From Vitrella brassicaformis CCMP3155 (Eukaryota > Protista > Chromerida): 6,194 nucleotides of DNA. The stretch spans positions 1 to 6,194 of the forward strand of contig CDMY01001016.1 of the NCBI GenBank assembly GCA_001179505.1, written 5' to 3'. A program made the position numbers and the translations under genes. The notes beneath the pieces are model-generated. The model saw only the letters and a program-made list of their open reading frames with translations, made no database searches and was not told where the DNA came from. Below are positions 1 through 5,538 of the stretch, piece by piece; position 1 is the stretch's first letter; the number at the start of each line of letters is the position of its first letter.

Positions 1-140
1 AAAAGCACCTCGTCTGTTTCTTTCTCGATGATCTCGCTGACCGCCAACACCTCATGCTGAGCGCTCGACAGCAACGACAAGCAAAAGAGAGGGGGAGTTA
101 GAGCGGAGACCGAGTTACACGTGCGAGATCTACGAGACAT
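1..140 (-). CDS. Probable 5' end of a divergently transcribed gene running off the window: exon 140-121, intron 120-64, exon 63-<1; MSRRSRTAQHEVLAVSEIIEKETDEVL...
   Basis: ATG at 140 (-). A 20-nt exon is followed by a 57-nt GT..AG intron with a CTAAC branch-like site and a pyrimidine tract. Splicing restores a frame with coding-like codons (GAG GTG TTG GCG GTC AGC GAG ATC ATC GAG). The acceptor is GAG rather than YAG, and the product is not recognised. Confidence 0.4.
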   Translation of the reverse strand, partial: MSRRSRTCNSVSALTPPLFCLSLLSSAQHEVLAVSEIIEKETDEVL

Positions 141-241
141 GACTTGTGATGCGCGTGTTCGTCACATTCCTACTCGCTACCCCGAGCTACTGCTGATACT
201 CCAACTGTTGGTTTCGCCAGTTGGTGACGGAGGAGGGGTGC

Positions 242-950
242 ATGGGCAAAGCTTCGGCTGAAAGGAAGAAGGAGAAACGTCGAGCGGCGAAGCAGGGGCC
301 ATCGGCGCTCAGCAGACTACTCAGCGGGCTCACTGAGGCCTTCAAAAGTATACAAACGGAACATCACGGGATGGAGGAGCTCTCTGCAATGCCTGCTGTC
401 TGCCTTGCTGACAGATCCGTGTGTGCGATACCCCTGCTATCTGGTTCTACTCGCTCTGTGGCTAGTTGGCGTCCGCTCCATCGGCGCACCGTAAGCCACG
501 TGGCGCGTGTGAGAGGGAATTGCGTGGTGTGTGTGTGTGTGTGCAGGTTTCTGATCCTGTCCATCATAGCGGGTATGTTTATCAACTTGGGCAGTCGGCA
601 GGGGTATCTATCAGCCTACTCCATCTTCAACCCAAACCAACGGAGCCTTCTCGGCGATCTGAGGGCAGAGCAACTCGAGGCCGAGCTGCGCAAAGGTCAA
701 AAGGAGCAACACACTTACAAGCAATGGACGGACGTCTACTGATCATTGCATCTCTGCAGGTCAGGGAGCGTCTATCGAGGCGGCCGACGACAGCAACCTG
801 ATTGACTTGCCGCAGCAGCATGTGGCATGTGGGGAGCTTCCAGCCCGCATGAGCAAGGCCGCAAACAAGCCGTGTCCTTGCGGCTCTGGCAAGAAATATA
901 AGCGGTGCTGCGCGGTGAATGGGAGAAACGAAGGCGATGAATGGGACTGA
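242..950 (+). CDS. SAYSD1: SAYSvFN-domain (SAYSD1-like) membrane protein with a C-terminal SEC-C motif; exons 242-347, 415-490, 547-695, 760-950; 173 aa
   Basis: Three GT-AG introns (348-414, 67 nt; 491-546, 56 nt; 696-759, 64 nt) are phase-consistent. Spliced protein: MGKASAERKKEKRRAAKQGPSALSRLLSGLTEAFKNPCVRYPCYLVLLALWLVGVRSIGAPFLILSIIAGMFINLGSRQGYLSAYSIFNPNQRSLLGDLRAEQLEAELRKGQGASIEAADDSNLIDLPQQHVACGELPARMSKAANKPCPCGSGKKYKRCCAVNGRNEGDEWD*. A hydrophobic hairpin followed by NLG..SAYSIFNP..L.G.L.AEQLE.EL matches the SAYSvFN family signature (PF10260) as I recall it. Confidence 0.9.
527..544 (+). repeat. (GT)n microsatellite at the 3' end of SAYSD1 intron 2
   Basis: gtgtgtgtgtgtgtgtg directly before the CAG acceptor at 544-546. 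Confidence 0.85.
864..911 (+). other. SEC-C (SecA C-terminal type) Cys4 metal-binding motif NKPCPCGSGKKYKRCC, in exon 4 of the SAYSD1-like gene
   Basis: Direct translation: AAC AAG CCG TGT CCT TGC GGC TCT GGC AAG AAA TAT AAG CGG TGC TGC. Near-perfect match to the SEC-C consensus N.PCPCGSGKKYK.C(C/H) (PF02810). Confidence 0.93.
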
Positions 951-1373
951 CCATTCATTGGCCTGCCGATTGGCCCTACGGCCCCTGACGGTGTGTGTAG
1001 AGGGACGGGGCTGTGGGGTGGGATGATGTGAGACGACCTGGGCTGTTTGACTACGTGGGGGAATGTACAGATGACAACTCTCGCACTGTCGAACTTCGGG
1101 CATCTCAATTCGCTGGACATTGTGTGGTATCTGGATGCGTACGTACATGCGTACGCGTATCCATCCATCGCATGCGTGCAGACACACATACCTGACGTGC
1201 CTGACGATCGAAGGATGTGGATGAGGCAGTCAGTCAGCCAGCTGGGGGATCGATGGGATATCAGTCAGTCAGTCATCCACTCACTCACCCACTCATCGTC
1301 CTTGGGCAGCAGATACTCATTCGTCGAACCGACAAACACATCACCTCACCACCACAACTCCCGTCAATTATGT

Positions 1374-1412
1374 CCTGTCTGTCTATCTGTCTGTCTGTCT
1401 GTGTGTCTGTGT
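1374..1412. repeat. (CTGT)n/(GT)n simple repeat between the convergent genes
   Basis: ctgtctgtctatctgtctgtctgtctgtgtgtctgtgtgtg. Confidence 0.8.
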
Positions 1413-1452
1413 GTGCATGTATGTCTCAGCGTCGCCTTCGCCTGCCAGCATC

Positions 1453-4400
1453 TCAGATGGGTGCTTCCTTGCTCTTGTTCTTCTTCTTCACGACACTCTT
1501 GAAAGCGCCTGTGATCGATGCTGTCCGCGATTTCTTCTTCCCGCTCTCTTGGCCAGACCCTGGCAGCTCCGCCACTGTGTCCCCTTGTTCCTGCTCCTCT
1601 CCCTCCTCCTCCTCCTCCTCCTTCTTCTTCTTCCTCTTTTTCTCCTTTTTCTCCTCGTCCTTGCGGAGTTTTGCGTCTGCTTTCTCTTGTTTTTCGGTCC
1701 ATTTTTTTTGCTCTTTGTACTTCTTCTCGGTCAGATCGGTAAAGAGAGCTACCGATGCGCTGCACCCAGGCATAGATGTCCATATCAACACCACACATAG
1801 AGTCATGCATACCATGCGCACCATGACACCTGACTGAATGTCCATGCAGGCAGGCCTACCCTCTCTCTTTGAGGAGGTTGCTGAGTTTCTCAAAAAACCC
1901 TTTGAGGAGATGTGTCTTGAACACGTTGATGAGTGGCTTGAGGTACTTCCACTCCGCTCCACTGACACTCCGCCTGTCACTCAGTCGACCGACCGACAGA
2001 CAGACACACAGACGGAGATGCGGCTCATGATTAGAGGCCATGCATATCTTACCAGTCGAGATGAGATTTTTCTTTCTCTGACAAGCTGCCCAAAGTGATC
2101 TCGAAGTTCCTGGCCTCTGTGTTGGTCGGGTGCAGCACAGCTGCGCCCGAACAGACAGAGAGAAAAAGGCAGGGAGGGGGAGACCAGGATACATAAAAAT
2201 GGTGTATCCCTCTCCCTCTCCCTCTCCCTCTCTGCGCTTGTACTGTGTTGCGATGCATACCGTAATCATGGAGGATGACTTTGAACAACTGATCTGCCTC
2301 CTGTTTCATGCAGAATTACGTTTGTTCCATGAATGTTGTGTCTATGTGTGATCTTACCTCGAGAAGCTCTCTGGTAGAGAGTGCGAGTTGCTCGGGGATT
2401 TCTGTTGCATGAGGGCCCCATGCCACACCCTTGCTGCCTTTGGTATACATGTCGAGACGGTACAGTGGGGTCTCGTCGACGGTGAAGGCATGTCTATGTT
2501 TCTTCGAAACGTCTAGGGTCATCTTGTCCCTCACCTCGAAGATGTTGAACTGCATCCTATCCCATTCATCAGCCCACTGACAGACAGACAGACAGACAGA
2601 CCCTGCCGGATTGGACTGCAGAGTGGGGTGGCTGGCAGGCTGGCTTACCCTGTGTAGCTGATCATTCAGCGCTTGCCTCAAAACAACAGGGTGCCATTCC
2701 TCTTCCTTCAAATAGATCGAGGCATGGCATGCACGGCGGACAGACAGACAGACAGACAGACAGACGTGGGTGTGCGACAAAGACTGGCTGAGCAAAGACT
2801 GACTGGACACCAGTATTTGCTTATCTATCTTCCTAAGTAGAGCGGATTTAGCCTCTTTCCAATCCATCGGAAGTCTCGAAAGCGCCTCGTCAGTGTAGGC
2901 GTTGATCGACTGCCATGCTTTGGGCGAGAACAAGCCAGCCGGCTGAACATTCAGGAAGGGACCGGTGGCCGTAAAGACGTACAGGTGTGAATAGGTGTCT
3001 CGTTCAAATTGCCTGCCTCGTTGCCTAGCTCTTTGTTGTCGGCCGACAGGGAAGTGAACAGAAGTGCGTGAAGGACACACGGATCTGAACGAACGAAAGA
3101 GAAGCATCTCGCTTCAGACGAGGACAGACAGATGGACAGGCGCAGCACCTGTTGGCGACTTTGGTTTGACCTGCAGACAGACAGACAGACAGACAGGTAA
3201 GCAGGCATTGACCATTCGACAAGTCAGTGTTGCAGTGGATTGACTGACGTGCGTGTCTTACCTCCAGCTGCTGAAACTCCGTGGAGTGGTCCATCAAGGC
3301 GAAGAGCAGCATGATCAAGGACTTGAGACGAGCTGCAGACAACAGCAGCAGCAGCAACAAAAATGACCGGAGAGAGCCAAGAGACACAAGTTACCAAAAG
3401 CCCCGTATGCTTCGAGGGCCACGAGGGGCCGTTGCCAGGAGTAATTGAGGTGGATCTGCGTTCATGACAGCCAGATGCAAGCTCGTGTTGTGATGTGATG
3501 TGACCTTTGACAAGTCTTTCCACTCCTTGTCCCAAATTTGGAAAGACTTTCCGTAGTAGTCCAGCTTGCGGCGTACAAAGCCTGCAGATCGACGGCTTGC
3601 CGCTCTCTGTGTCCGTCAGACGCCGATGTGTGTGTGCATATGTGTGCTGACCAGCCACCCGACGGCCAACACCTTTACTCATGGGGTTTGATCCCGCCTC
3701 TCTGTATGTGTGTGCCATGTACCTACACATCACAGCCCAGCATTAGTTCGTTCGACCATACCGACGCGCCACAGCCGGCCCTACACTTCGAAGTACTCTG
3801 AAGAAACAGGGGACATACAGAAGTGTAGGGTCTCACATACACACGCGCGTACCTCCCATTATGTCGATCTGCAACAGACAAAGAGGCATGTCCTGTCGTG
3901 TCTGCCTCTTTGCTTTGATGTGACGCGTGGCCAACCAGTCTGTTGTTGAGTCTCCTGATGTTGGTCTCCTCCTTGGCCTCCTCTCCGATCTCTGCGGCTG
4001 TCACATGGTAGGCCGAAATCTTGCCCTCCTTGATGACCTGTGTCGCAAACTCGTGCTGTCGCAAGTCCTTGAAGGCCTCTCGCTCCAGCGCTATTTTGTG
4101 CTTGGTCTCGATCCTGTTCTTCGCCCACTTGACGAACCTATGAGAGAGTCACCAACCCCACAGACAGACACAGAGACTTGTGCTTGGTCCGCGAACCTTT
4201 TCTTCTCACCTCTCGCGCAGTGTTGCGAAGCTGTCGTGGAAGTATTTTCGGACGCTCTTTTTCCATGGAGGGTCGCTATCGACAGACGTCGGAGAAATAA
4301 CGCCATCCGCAAGCTCCTGTAGCCCAGTGATGAGTGTGCAGCCGATGGATGGGCAAGCACACAAGTGAATGCGCCGCCCATGTAGGTGGATACCTGTCCG

Positions 4401-5538
4401 TATTCAGCAAGCACGTCGACCAGCTGAAGAGAGAGATCCCGCCGCTGTGTCGCGAACTTTGCGTCTGGGACGGCCCAATATTCAATCTGTCAAAGGATGC
4501 GTATACGTATATGCAATATGGAGAGATGGGGAGAATGAGAGACGTGGATCGACCTCATAGACGGTGTCCAGCCATGCCGCTTCCTCCAAGTATTCGCTCA
4601 ACGTGCTGATGTATCTGTCCACCGCCTCGCGGTCAGAGTGGTCTGTGGATGCCGAGTGAAAGAGGCAGTGAATGCAGAATCCAGTCGTTGCTTCACGTAT
4701 GTCTCACCGCCCCAACCGCGGAGCCCGGGTTTGTCGATCGCCTCGGCAAAAATATCCCCCGGCTTCTGCCCCGTTTCCTCTTCCGTAGGGACTTCAAGGA
4801 CACTTTCAAGGACGTTGTCGATTCTCTTGCGCAGCGCCTTGAGGAATTTTGATGGCGGGGCCTTCTGAGGACTTTCCTGGCCGCCCGGGACCCACTCTGG
4901 GATGGAGAGCTCGCCGAAGAGGTAGTCGACCCAGCTGGCCGCCTTAGATCCCCAGCCTTTGGCTTCTCCTTCAGACTCAGCCTGGGCTTCCTTTTCGGCC
5001 TTCTCTTTCCCCGTCTGAAGCCCCTCCTGAAAATACTGATCTAGCGTGTAGTTGACCGCCTTCTTGCCCCAGCTCTTGCCAGTCTCCCACGCCTTCCAGC
5101 CGAGGGCTTTGCCAAGGTCCTTCCCCTTCTCATACACCTGGGCGGATAGGCAGCGTCATATGCGGTGAGATCATGTGTGTGTCGATGGATAAATCGACAT
5201 CCCGACACTCACCTCACGGCCAAGAGCCTGCACGCATACGAGAAATGTACAGACACTGCATACGAGAAATGTGTAGACCTGCTCACCCGTACAGCGCTAT
5301 CGATATATTCGGGAACGACCGCCATTGCAGAATCCGTTTGATTCTCCTTTTTTGGCATCCCCTCTTTTGGCTTCATGCCTTCGGCAACCCATCCTATCTC
5401 GGCCTTCCTGGACTGCCTCTTACTTGTCTGTGTCTGCTGCTTCGGCTCGGGTGTAGGACTGTCCCTATTTGCGATGAGGGATTCGGCAGAGAGCGGCAGC
5501 TGAGAAAGCAACACCAAGACGGCGAAGAAGGGAAACAT
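1453..5538 (-). CDS. Multi-exon gene (about 22 exons, about 847 aa): uncharacterised protein with predicted signal peptide and K/E-rich basic C-terminus
   Basis: Phase-consistent exon chain (-): 5538-5287, 5227-5213, 5137-4708, 4642-4554, 4486-4394, 4316-4210, 4137-3936, 3868-3853, 3797-3785, 3722-3652, 3581-3505, 3455-3395, 3332-3262, 3170-3149, 3084-3017, 2942-2811, 2705-2649, 2576-2358, 2300-2261, 2140-2053, 1973-1860, 1759-1453. Total 2544 nt with no internal stop; introns 49-120 nt. It begins MFPFFAVLVLLSQLPLSAES and ends ...KKKNKSKEAPI*. Junctions at 3679/3652, 3170-2943 and 2705 and the exact start are uncertain. No family recognised. Confidence 0.8.
1570..1720 (-). repeat. Low-complexity coding stretch (GAG/AAG repeats) giving poly-Lys/poly-Glu in the last exon of gene 2
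   Basis: (CTC)n and (TTC)n runs on the + strand; translation DEEKKEKKRKKKKEEEEEEGEEQEQ. Confidence 0.85.
2208..2233. repeat. (CCCTCT)4 intronic hexamer repeat
   Basis: ccctctccctctccctctccctct inside intron 2260-2141. Confidence 0.85.
2579..2601. repeat. (GACA)n intronic repeat next to the acceptor at 2577
   Basis: Read directly; forms a (TGTC)n tract before the CAG on the coding strand. Confidence 0.85.
2739..2765. repeat. (GACA)n intronic repeat
   Basis: Read directly, inside intron 2810-2706. Confidence 0.85.
3174..3196. repeat. (CAGA)n intronic repeat next to the acceptor at 3171
   Basis: Read directly; (CTGT)n tract before the microexon 3170-3149. Confidence 0.85.
5234..5281. repeat. 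24-nt-period tandem duplication inside intron 5286-5228
   Basis: gcatacgagaaatgt is identical at 5234-5248 and 5258-5272, followed by acagac/gtagac. Confidence 0.85.

What the first reader, a model, noticed from the sequence alone, without database searches (positions are those of the whole stretch)
547..950. Hidden exon fuses an ER translocon quality-control factor (SAYSD1) to a bacterial SecA-type SEC-C metal-binding motif
Seen in sequence: the ORF track ends the protein at 742. A 64-nt intron (696-759, CTGAT branch-like site, TCTCTGCAG acceptor) instead joins the SAYSvFN domain in frame to exon 760-950, which encodes a roughly 35-aa linker and then NKPCPCGSGKKYKRCC. Established: mammalian SAYSD1 is a Sec61-associated sensor of UFMylated, translocation-stalled ribosomes and has no such motif. 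SEC-C (PF02810) is the Zn/Fe-binding tail of bacterial SecA, binds SecB, has been implicated in ribosome binding, and also occurs in YecA/YchJ. Inference: a module from the bacterial translocase sits on a eukaryotic translocon-surveillance protein, probably on the cytosolic face. It could supply a ribosome- or chaperone-docking or metal/redox-sensing arm, and so point to a variant ER ribosome-rescue pathway in this lineage. I cannot tell whether this domain architecture is already catalogued.
Basis: partly seen in the sequence, partly recalled or inferred. Interest (0 to 1): 0.8.

Follow-up and report, generated by a model that had tools for sequence, protein, structure and literature searches.

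The report
SAYSvFN membrane protein with SEC-C tail
The hidden exon is real: this alga's small SAYSD1-family membrane protein ends in a SecA-like metal-binding knuckle, but the same design occurs throughout the SAR protists and is already in databases, though nobody has studied it.

Summary
Observation confirmed. The + strand carries a four-exon gene (242-347, 415-490, 547-695, 760-950) for a 173-aa protein. Transcript-type contigs that match the window exactly have the 696-759 intron removed at 695/760, and DNA-type contigs keep it. Exon 3 is a SAYSvFN domain (PF10260, 55 bits). Exon 4 is an acidic linker plus a SEC-C motif (PF02810, 35 bits; CxCx8CC with the conserved Ser and Tyr).

Interpretation partly supported. 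The fusion is not special to this lineage. In an exhaustive profile search, 116 of the best 152 cluster representatives have the same architecture. Named members cover alveolates, Rhizaria and a stramenopile: Chromera, Platyproteum, Piridium, Cardiosporidium, Perkinsus, Alexandrium, Ichthyophthirius, Bigelowiella, Lapot and Blastocystis. Public databases already list both domains on them. No paper in the library discusses them.

The role as a sensor of UFMylated ribosomes is doubtful here. A published survey reports UFMylation lost in Perkinsus and in Vitrella, and the scan's unverified notes name Vitrella as the source genome. Some relatives without a knuckle carry a linear basic motif at the same place.

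Most likely reading: a membrane hairpin protein whose cytosolic tail presents a basic, metal-held docking module on an acidic tether, probably for the ribosome and independent of UFM1. The function is inferred, not shown.

The parts
158..241 (+). 5' untranslated region present in transcript contigs (the first 38 nt of the transcript are not in the window)
   Evidence: L001 39-228 = window 158-347. X1/X2 contigs start at 178.
242..347 (+). Exon 1 coding part: start ATG, basic N-terminus (net +7 in the first 25 residues) and a probable amphipathic helix
   Evidence: The Chromera homologue has a similar basic N-terminus, and helix 15-35 in its AlphaFold model.
348..414 (+). Intron 1, 67 nt, GT..AG
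   Evidence: Joint 347/415 in X1 and X2, absent in DNA runs. Removed in L001.
415..490 (+). Exon 2: first hydrophobic helix of the membrane hairpin (about 432-476)
   Evidence: Hydropathy of residues 41-58. Aligns without a gap to P0002 and P0008.
491..546 (+). Intron 2, 56 nt, GT..AG, ends in a (GT)n run; retained in the JGI contig
   Evidence: X1/X2 record 1: record positions 171-248 = window 415-492 and 252-393 = window 552-693, which fits only if 491-546 is removed. L001 keeps it, giving an in-frame stop.
547..695 (+). Exon 3: second hairpin helix and the SAYSvFN-containing domain (SAYSIFN heptad at 611-631)
   Evidence: PF10260, E 5e-15, 55.5 bits.
696..759 (+). Intron 3, 64 nt, GT..AG; holds the stop (740-742) that ends the unspliced ORF
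   Evidence: Joint 693/758 (cut +2 = 695/760) in X1 and X2, none in DNA runs X3/X4. Removed in L001.
760..863 (+). Exon 4, first part: acidic flexible linker with the NLIDLP stretch shared with Chromera, Platyproteum and Piridium
   Evidence: Alignments. pLDDT below 50 in the homologue model at 121-127.
864..911 (+). SEC-C / SecA-like metal-binding motif NKPCPCGSGKKYKRCC (CxCx8CC, conserved Ser and Tyr)
   Evidence: PF02810, E 1e-8, 35.3 bits. Sequence matches to solved YchJ 9l6b and SecA 1ozb, 1sx0, 1tm6.
912..950 (+). C-terminal tail AVNGRNEGDEWD and stop codon (948-950); acidic-aromatic end
   Evidence: Such an end occurs in 51 of 108 family members, against 8% of other 12-residue windows.
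951..1226 (+). 3' untranslated region (minimum extent)
   Evidence: X1 record 1 runs to 1226.

Best explanation
Window 242-950 (+) is an expressed four-exon gene for a 173-aa protein of the SAYSvFN (SAYSD1-like) family.

Shown:
- The protein has a basic N-terminus, a short helix, a two-helix membrane hairpin and the SAYSvFN-containing domain.
- A roughly 35-residue acidic linker follows, then a SEC-C metal-binding knuckle and a short acidic-aromatic end.
- It is one member of an old family with this whole architecture that spans the SAR protists.

Inferred working:
- By homology with SAYSD1, the hairpin sits in the ER membrane with both ends in the cytosol.
- The C-terminal part repeats the design of the SecA C-terminal tail (flexible linker plus metal-binding domain). 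It presents a small, very basic, Zn/Fe-held knuckle on a tether.
- The knuckle docks the protein on a partner with an acidic or RNA surface. The most likely partner is the ribosome near the tunnel exit at the translocon.
- Docking does not need UFM1. Lineages reported to lack UFM1 keep the protein, and some relatives replace the knuckle by a linear basic motif at the same position.

Gene structure, domains, expression and distribution are shown. Localisation, topology, metal binding and the ribosome as partner are inferred.
For: - Gene model and splicing.
- Domains.
- Architecture conserved from end to end in Platyproteum, Chromera and others.
- Distribution: 116 of the best 152 representatives carry a SAYSvFN-like heptad followed by CxCx8C[CH]. 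Pfam on 45 of them gives 45 SAYSvFN and 41 SEC-C.
- Named members in all three SAR branches.
- SAYSD1 has a kinked membrane domain with both termini cytosolic and binds ribosome, UFM1 and Sec61: PMC10010011.
- AlphaFold model of the Chromera homologue: helix 15-35, hairpin 38-59/61-77, knuckle at pLDDT about 88. The knuckle superposes on the SecA C-terminus 1ozb_I at 0.7 A over 19 columns.
- In bacteria the SecA metal-binding domain binds ribosomes and crosslinks to uL23, and it is kept in species without SecB: PMC6620043; 10.1101/613315.
- UFMylation is reported lost in Perkinsus and Vitrella: PMC10183829.
- Thirteen SAYSvFN relatives without a knuckle carry RKKGKKARRxYEERL at the same place.
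Against: - No experiment on any member of this family was found.
- ER location and topology rest on homology with a distant animal protein.
- The Foldseek match has E 1.4, because the domain is tiny.
- The basic N-terminus is not conserved across the family (net charge -5 to +10). The Phe of the SAYSD1 N17 ribosome-binding motif is not evident.
- SEC-C motifs also act in SecB binding, iron binding and redox-switched DNA binding, so the ribosome is only one candidate partner.
- The organism name, and therefore the loss of UFM1 in this genome, was not verified by me.
- The transcript evidence is contigs, possibly from one project.
Confidence: 0.55

Rival explanations
1. The SEC-C knuckle is mainly a metal or redox sensor, not a docking piece. 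Iron or zinc occupancy, or oxidation of its cysteines, would switch the protein between an autoinhibited and an active state or drive dimerisation. The SecA tail autoinhibits SecA in this way, and the C-terminal cysteines of YchJ form a ROS-dependent disulfide.
For: SecA-like metal-binding domains bind iron preferentially through the conserved Ser, and a sensing role has been proposed for them (10.1101/613315). The YchJ C-terminal SEC-C cysteines act as a reversible redox fastener (PMC13377102). The SecA tail autoinhibits the enzyme (PMC6620043). The window motif keeps all four Cys, the Ser and the Tyr.
Against: Thirteen relatives carry a cysteine-free linear basic motif at the same place. That points to charge rather than metal chemistry as the conserved property. 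No partner domain that could be autoinhibited is evident in a 173-aa protein.
Confidence: 0.2
2. The family acts in membrane traffic or selective removal of ER content rather than at the ribosome. The basic module and the acidic-aromatic C-terminus would be short motifs for coat, tether or autophagy machinery.
For: SAYSD1 loss traps stalled clients in the ER, and the pathway needs TRAPP and Golgi export. An acidic-aromatic C-terminal end is enriched in the family: 47% against 8% of other windows, and Trp in the last 8 residues in 30% against 12% expected. The Perkinsus chesapeaki gene model carries a COPI_assoc domain in front of the SAYSvFN and SEC-C parts.
Against: The family members are related, so the enrichment is not an independent count. 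The Perkinsus model is partial and may merge two genes. No known motif was matched by a tool; resemblance to Trp-acidic or ATG8/UFM1-binding motifs is from memory only.
Confidence: 0.15
3. The fusion is an artefact or a minor isoform. The main product would stop at 742 with intron 3 retained, or exon 4 would be a separate small gene.
For: The unspliced ORF 221-742 exists. An ATG at 849 could start a 33-residue peptide. Contigs drop rare variants, and one assembly (L001) retains intron 2.
Against: All three transcript-type contigs have 696-759 removed, and the depth in X1/X2 leaves no room for a retaining contig. The linker encoded before the ATG at 849 is conserved (NLIDLP). More than 100 cluster representatives encode both domains in one chain, including proteins annotated in the Ichthyophthirius and Blastocystis genome records.
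Confidence: 0.03

Closest known systems
Mammalian SAYSD1 (SAYSvFN domain-containing protein 1; Wang et al., Cell Rep 2023, PMC10010011)
   Same: SAYSvFN domain above the Pfam cut-off. A two-helix or kinked hydrophobic hairpin lies directly before it, a helix precedes the hairpin, and the protein is small.
   Different: Human SAYSD1 ends with the SAYSvFN-containing domain (138-183). The window protein goes on for 63 residues: linker, SEC-C knuckle and acidic tail. SAYSD1 binds the ribosome through an N-terminal Phe-plus-basic helix and binds UFM1 through the middle helix. Neither feature could be shown here, and UFM1 is reported absent from Vitrella and Perkinsus.
C-terminal tail of bacterial SecA (flexible linker domain plus metal-binding domain; PDB 1ozb, 1sx0/1sx1, 1tm6)
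   Same: A flexible linker followed by a CxCx8C[CH] knuckle with the conserved Ser and aromatic residue. The motif matches the solved SecA peptides by sequence, and the predicted fold of the homologue's knuckle superposes on 1ozb_I.
   Different: No SecA ATPase domains. The flank is SKxANKP instead of VGRNDP. There are 12 further residues after the motif (family median 19, against 4 in the bacterial-type hits). No SecB exists in eukaryotes. It sits on a membrane hairpin protein.
YchJ and YecA (bacterial proteins with SecA-like metal-binding domains)
   Same: Small proteins with a C-terminal SEC-C motif. The best PDB sequence match of exon 4 is the YchJ C-terminal peptide 9l6b_C.
   Different: YchJ has a UPF0225/NTF2-like core and acts as a redox-switched DNA-binding factor. 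YecA has UPF0149. Neither has a membrane hairpin or a SAYSvFN domain.
Catalogued SAR homologues, e.g. Chromera velia Cvel_31375 (UniProt A0A0G4HTK5), Ichthyophthirius multifiliis XP_004039785.1 ('SEC-C motif family protein, putative'), Blastocystis KAK8803781.1, Bigelowiella natans JGI 88251
   Same: Same full architecture: hairpin, SAYSvFN, acidic linker, SKxAN-CxCGSGKKxKKCC, then a tail. The window protein is 47% identical to the Chromera protein over 136 residues.
   Different: None of substance. The window gene is the orthologue in another chrompodellid-type alga. None of these proteins has been studied.
SAYSvFN proteins without a knuckle that carry RKKGKKARRxYEERL (P0114, P0122, P0150 and others; probably diatoms and others)
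   Same: Same order of parts: SAYSvFN, acidic linker, strongly basic module, acidic-aromatic end.
   Different: The basic module is linear and cysteine-free instead of a metal-held knuckle.

Membership tests
SAYSvFN domain family (PF10260; SAYSD1-like) | Match to the Pfam model above its gathering score | tested here: met
   Exon 3: 55.5 bits against a cut-off of 25, E 5e-15, profile positions 21-70. Positions 1-20 lie in exon 2, which aligns to homologues whose match starts at profile position 7.
SAYSvFN domain family (PF10260; SAYSD1-like) | SAYSvFN heptad directly after a two-helix hydrophobic hairpin | tested here: met
   SAYSIFN at 611-631. Hydrophobic stretches at residues 41-58 and 55-77. 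Hairpin helices 38-59 and 61-77 at pLDDT above 90 in the Chromera homologue model.
SAYSvFN domain family (PF10260; SAYSD1-like) | N-terminal ribosome-binding helix (conserved Phe followed by four basic residues) as in SAYSD1 N17 | tested here: inconclusive
   The window has ERKKEKRRAAK (net +7 in 25 residues) but no evident Phe. N-terminal charge across the family ranges from -5 to +10. No animal sequence was aligned.
SAYSvFN domain family (PF10260; SAYSD1-like) | UFM1-binding middle helix and dependence on ribosome UFMylation | not testable with these tools
   A helix precedes the hairpin in the homologue model. Binding cannot be computed. A published survey reports UFMylation lost in Vitrella and Perkinsus.
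SAYSvFN domain family (PF10260; SAYSD1-like) | ER location, Sec61 association, both termini cytosolic | not testable with these tools
   Inferred from SAYSD1, the absence of an N-terminal hydrophobic signal, the basic N-terminus and the reduced-Cys knuckle.
SEC-C / SecA-like metal-binding domain (PF02810) | Match to the Pfam model above its gathering score | tested here: met
   35.3 bits against a cut-off of 20.4, E 1e-8, profile positions 2-18 of 19.
SEC-C / SecA-like metal-binding domain (PF02810) | Ligand pattern CxCx8C[CH] with the conserved Ser and aromatic residue | tested here: met
   CPCGSGKKYKRCC: four Cys, Ser at +4, Tyr at +8. The pattern is as described in 10.1101/613315.
SEC-C / SecA-like metal-binding domain (PF02810) | Knuckle fold as in the solved SecA and YchJ peptides | tested here: inconclusive
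   Sequence matches to 9l6b_C (E 5.5e-6), 1ozb_I, 1sx0 and 1tm6. The homologue model superposes on 1ozb_I at rmsd 0.7 A over 19 columns, but Foldseek E is 1.4. The window's own protein was not folded.
SEC-C / SecA-like metal-binding domain (PF02810) | Binds Zn or Fe | not testable with these tools
   Needs purified protein.
SecA translocase ATPase | DEAD motor, preprotein-binding and helical scaffold/wing domains | tested here: not met
   Pfam finds only SAYSvFN and SEC-C in the window pieces and in 45 relatives. The protein has 173 residues.

The most novel reading that the evidence does not exclude
In SAR protists the tethered basic module (the SEC-C knuckle, or its linear substitute) is the means by which a SAYSD1-type factor recognises ribosomes stuck on the ER translocon without any UFM1 mark. 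If so, this family would answer the open question of how UFM1-less eukaryotes such as Vitrella and Perkinsus clear clogged translocons. It would also show that the SecA-like metal-binding domain is a ribosome-docking module shared between bacteria and eukaryotes.
Probability: 0.15. Interest if true: 0.7.

Novelty: new member of a known kind. Interest (0 to 1): 0.4.

Why it matters
The finding corrects a gene model: the real protein is 173 aa with a SEC-C tail, not an ORF ending at 742. It also shows that the SAYSD1 family, described in the literature only for animals, has a SAR-wide form with a SecA-type metal-binding knuckle.

This is a natural 'Rosetta stone' fusion of two modules that are each linked to ribosome-coupled protein translocation. 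The form persists in lineages reported to have lost UFM1. It therefore offers a concrete, testable candidate for UFM1-independent handling of ER-bound ribosomes, a question raised explicitly in PMC10183829. The architecture itself is already in databases, so the news lies in the comparative reading, not in the discovery of the fusion.

Tried and rejected
- Independent small gene in exon 4, or an intron-retaining main isoform: rejected (see the third rival).
- Chimeric transcript assembly as the source of the junction: rejected. The joint has GT..AG ends, occurs in two runs and one separate assembly, is absent from DNA contigs, and gives a protein collinear with homologues.
- Recent transfer of the knuckle from a bacterial SecA: not supported. 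The flank and the extra tail are family-specific and shared across SAR. A tree of a 17-residue motif was judged meaningless and not built.
- Last word-index search with a 20-member alignment: swamped by bacterial YchJ proteins. It added only Eimeria tenella.
- Paper searches for protist SAYSvFN or SEC-C work: nothing. All 13 papers that hold 'SAYSvFN' concern animals.
- Foldseek of the whole homologue model against the PDB: no significant match beyond the knuckle.
- Rfam and tRNA scans of the window: empty.
- The search of earlier findings near the window and for UFM1 words: nothing.
- The complete spliced protein has no reference. I used it only inside scripts. Server-side searches used exon pieces, P0001 or homologues, so the window's own full-length protein was neither scanned against Pfam as one chain nor folded.
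- I did not verify the organism name or search this genome for UFM1-pathway genes.
Full report
**1. What is in the sequence**

The + strand of window 242-950 holds a four-exon gene: exons 242-347, 415-490, 547-695 and 760-950. The introns are 348-414 (67 nt), 491-546 (56 nt) and 696-759 (64 nt), all GT..AG. Joined, the exons give a 522-nt reading frame for 173 residues.

**2. Domains**

- Exon 3 matches Pfam SAYSvFN PF10260 (E 5e-15, 55.5 bits, cut-off 25).
- Exon 4 matches SEC-C PF02810 (E 1e-8, 35.3 bits, cut-off 20.4).
- The motif has the ligand spacing CxCx8CC and the conserved Ser and Tyr described for SecA-like metal-binding domains (10.1101/613315).
- By sequence it matches the solved YchJ C-terminal peptide 9l6b_C (E 5.5e-6) and the SecA peptides 1ozb_I, 1sx0 and 1tm6.

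**3. Is the junction used?**

Three transcript-type contigs say yes.

- A 2024-nt JGI contig (L001, sample 3300017148) is 100% identical to the window. It lacks 348-414 and 696-759 but keeps 491-546.
- Logan contigs of runs X1 and X2 show the joints 347/415 and 693/758. The second reads GT..AG when the cut is moved +2, which is 695/760.
- Their record numbering (171-248 = 415-492; 252-393 = 552-693) also fits only if 491-546 is removed. The tool did not list that joint because it masks the (GT)n run at 519-551.
- In X1 and X2 the depth in the bins that contain introns 2 and 3 is exactly what the spliced contig alone gives, so no retaining contig is present there.
- The DNA-type runs X3 and X4 have no such joints, and their contigs cross 178/260-1370 unbroken.

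Caveats: the tool only guesses that X1 and X2 are RNA. They and L001 may come from the same cultures. Contigs cannot give isoform ratios.

Homology gives independent support. The spliced protein aligns with the Chromera homologue over residues 33-164 (47% identity) and with five other relatives across both junctions.

**4. The protein**

Reading from the N-terminus:
- a basic N-terminus (net +7 in the first 25 residues);
- a probable helix;
- two hydrophobic stretches (residues 41-58 and 55-77) separated by RSIGAP;
- SAYSIFN and the LLGDLRAEQLEAELRK segment;
- a 34-residue acidic linker with NLIDLP;
- SKAANKP-CPCGSGKKYKRCC;
- the end AVNGRNEGDEWD.

An AlphaFold model of the full-length Chromera homologue (45-sequence alignment, mean pLDDT 73.7) shows helix 15-35, a hairpin 38-59/61-77 at pLDDT above 90, a less confident SAYSvFN region, a disordered linker, and a knuckle at pLDDT about 88. 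The best Foldseek PDB match for that knuckle is the SecA C-terminus bound to SecB (1ozb_I, rmsd 0.7 A over 19 columns). Its E-value is only 1.4 because the domain is tiny.

**5. Distribution**

- The word-index search found the window's own transcript product (P0001, both Pfam domains precomputed) and a Platyproteum vivax transcript protein with the same architecture. A second search added a third lineage.
- A profile of these three, run against 1.84 billion representatives, gave 1042 hits at E <= 1e-3.
- Of the best 152 hits, 116 carry a SAYSvFN-like heptad followed by CxCx8C[CH].
- Pfam on 45 of them found SAYSvFN in 45 and SEC-C in 41.
- Named members with both Pfam domains at or above the SEC-C cut-off are Platyproteum vivax, Cardiosporidium cionae, Piridium sociabile, Chromera velia (UniProt A0A0G4HTK5), Perkinsus chesapeaki KAF4649420.1, Ichthyophthirius multifiliis XP_004039785.1 (named 'SEC-C motif family protein, putative'), Lapot gusevi, Bigelowiella natans and Blastocystis sp. 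KAK8803781.1 (Platyproteum, Chromera).
- Alexandrium monilatum and Eimeria tenella fall just below the SEC-C cut-off.
- Cryptosporidium ubiquitum has a variant knuckle with an insertion.
- The ESM Atlas holds two clusters (67 and 121 members) with both families, commonest in Apicomplexa and Ciliophora.

The fusion therefore spans Alveolata, Rhizaria and at least one stramenopile, and is already catalogued. It is not a peculiarity of this lineage.

**6. How the knuckle differs from bacterial SEC-C**

- In the family the flank is [KR]-x-A-N-[KQR]-P, against V-G-R-N-D-P in the SEC-C-only (mostly YchJ-type) hits.
- The family has a median of 19 residues after the CC, against 4.
- The end of the protein is often acidic and aromatic (WEKEWT, DDFD, EDDW; GDEWD in the window). 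This holds for 51 of 108 members, against 8% of other 12-residue windows and 16% of linker windows. Trp occurs in the last eight residues in 30%, against 12% expected. The members are related, so these counts are not independent.
- These family-wide traits speak for one old acquisition followed by vertical descent, not a recent capture from SecA.

**7. A comparison that bears on mechanism**

Among the best hits that lack a knuckle, 13 carry a cysteine-free basic motif, RKKGKKARRxYEERL. It sits at the position where the SAR proteins carry SKxANKP-CxCGSGKKYKKCC. It too follows an acidic linker and precedes an acidic-aromatic end. An Atlas lead places this form mainly in diatoms (score 0.90, a lead only). 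The conserved feature thus seems to be a strongly basic module on an acidic tether, and the metal knuckle is one way of building it.

**8. What is known about the parts**

- SAYSD1 (PMC10010011) is an ER membrane protein with a kinked membrane domain and both termini in the cytosol.
- Its N-terminal 17 residues bind the ribosome, and a middle helix binds UFM1. The SAYSvFN-containing domain (138-183) is its C-terminus and is needed for function. The protein associates with Sec61 and with stalled clients.
- The authors call it conserved in metazoans and missing from fungi.
- The SecA tail is a flexible linker plus a metal-binding domain. That domain binds SecB and ribosomes, and the tail crosslinks to uL23. 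It is kept in many species without SecB and modulates SecA by autoinhibition (PMC6620043).
- It binds iron in vivo through the conserved Ser (10.1101/613315).
- In YchJ the C-terminal SEC-C cysteines form a ROS-dependent disulfide that strengthens binding of a basic cluster to DNA (PMC13377102).

**9. UFM1**

A phylogenomic survey reports loss of UFMylation in Plasmodium, Gregarina, Perkinsus and Vitrella brassicaformis, and repeated loss in diatoms. [quoted passage not shown]

Perkinsus chesapeaki has the fusion. Earlier notes of this scan name the source genome as Vitrella brassicaformis. I did not verify that. What I saw fits it:
- the closest relatives are chrompodellids and squirmids;
- identity to the Chromera protein is only 47%;
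- exact transcript contigs come from two differently labelled cultures of one project.

The survey also aligns C53 from the ciliate Tetrahymena thermophila, alongside UFM1-encoding and UFM1-lacking species. I did not establish whether ciliates keep UFM1, so I can only say that a ciliate (Ichthyophthirius) also has the fusion. The fusion is thus present in at least one lineage reported to lack UFM1. That argues against an obligatory role as a reader of UFMylated ribosomes.

**10. Best explanation and rivals**

- *Best explanation (overall 0.55).* This is a real, expressed member of a SAR-wide family of SAYSvFN hairpin membrane proteins. The cytosolic C-terminus copies the linker-plus-knuckle design of the SecA tail and serves as a tethered basic docking module. 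The most likely partner is the ribosome at the translocon, and UFM1 is not needed. The gene, domains and distribution are near 0.95. The ribosome-docking function is about 0.35.
- *Rival 1 (0.2).* The knuckle is chiefly a metal or redox switch.
- *Rival 2 (0.15).* The family works in ER export or selective removal through short motifs.
- *Rival 3 (0.03).* The fusion is an artefact or a minor isoform.

**11. Novelty**

The architecture is in public databases. Ichthyophthirius multifiliis XP_004039785.1 is already named a SEC-C motif family protein, and UniProt entries are named SAYSvFN domain-containing protein. The exact C-terminal product of this gene is in JGI/IMG with both Pfam domains.

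No paper in the searchable library discusses it. Only 13 papers hold the word SAYSvFN, and all concern animals. I therefore rate the window gene a new member of a known, uncharacterised kind.

The comparative points appear to be unpublished and give moderate interest:
- the SAR-wide spread;
- the family-specific flank;
- the linear basic substitute;
- persistence where UFM1 is reported lost.

**12. Limits**

- The full spliced protein has no reference, so I used it only in scripts. Pfam and structure work used exon pieces, P0001 and homologues.
- The organism's identity and the absence of UFM1 in it were not tested here.

Noticed in passing
P0104, P0114, P0122, P0127, P0128, P0131, P0133, P0136, P0139, P0144, P0149, P0150, P0151 (hits): SAYSvFN proteins without a Cys knuckle carry a conserved linear basic motif, RKKGKKARRxYEERL, at the position of the SEC-C motif. 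It follows an acidic linker and precedes an acidic-aromatic end. An Atlas lead points to diatoms.
   Followed up: partly
window 933-947 (GDEWD) and the C-termini of family members: The acidic-aromatic C-terminal end (WEKEWT, DDFD, EDDW and the like) is enriched: 51 of 108 members against 8% of other windows, and Trp in the last 8 residues in 30% against 12% expected. It may be a short binding motif. No known motif was tested.
   Followed up: partly
window 95-210: High-copy repeat. Word depth in DNA runs X3/X4 is 400-1000 here, against 13-21 in the gene, and contigs break. The first 38 nt of the transcript contig (L001 1-38) are not in the window before 158, but they appear as loose ends of DNA contigs at 138/157. 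The assembly may be collapsed or variant just upstream of the gene.
   Followed up: partly
window 491-546 / L001 306-361: Intron 2 is retained in the JGI assembly of the transcript. This gives a stop after IGAP and made the gene caller split the product into 61-aa and 120-aa ORFs. The intron is removed in the Logan contigs of X1 and X2.
   Followed up: yes
window 1427-2726 (- strand): Convergent neighbour gene with at least five introns that read CT..AC on the + strand (joints 1759/1860, 1972/2052, 2140/2261, 2299/2357, 2568/2649). Its stop is at 1453-1455. The K/E-rich product of 273+ residues has no Pfam match. The JGI contig bridges both genes through their 3' ends.
   Followed up: partly
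window 1375-1414, 2579-2601, 2739-2765, 3174-3196: Short (CTGT)n / (GACA)n / (CAGA)n microsatellites recur in the non-coding parts.
   Followed up: no
P0018 (Perkinsus chesapeaki KAF4649420.1): This partial gene model has a COPI_assoc domain (PF08507, 43.6 bits) in front of the SAYSvFN and SEC-C parts. It is either two merged neighbouring genes or a further fusion.
   Followed up: no
window 4598-5137 (- strand): A 179-residue ORF rich in K, E, G and W has no Pfam match. I did not examine it further.
   Followed up: no
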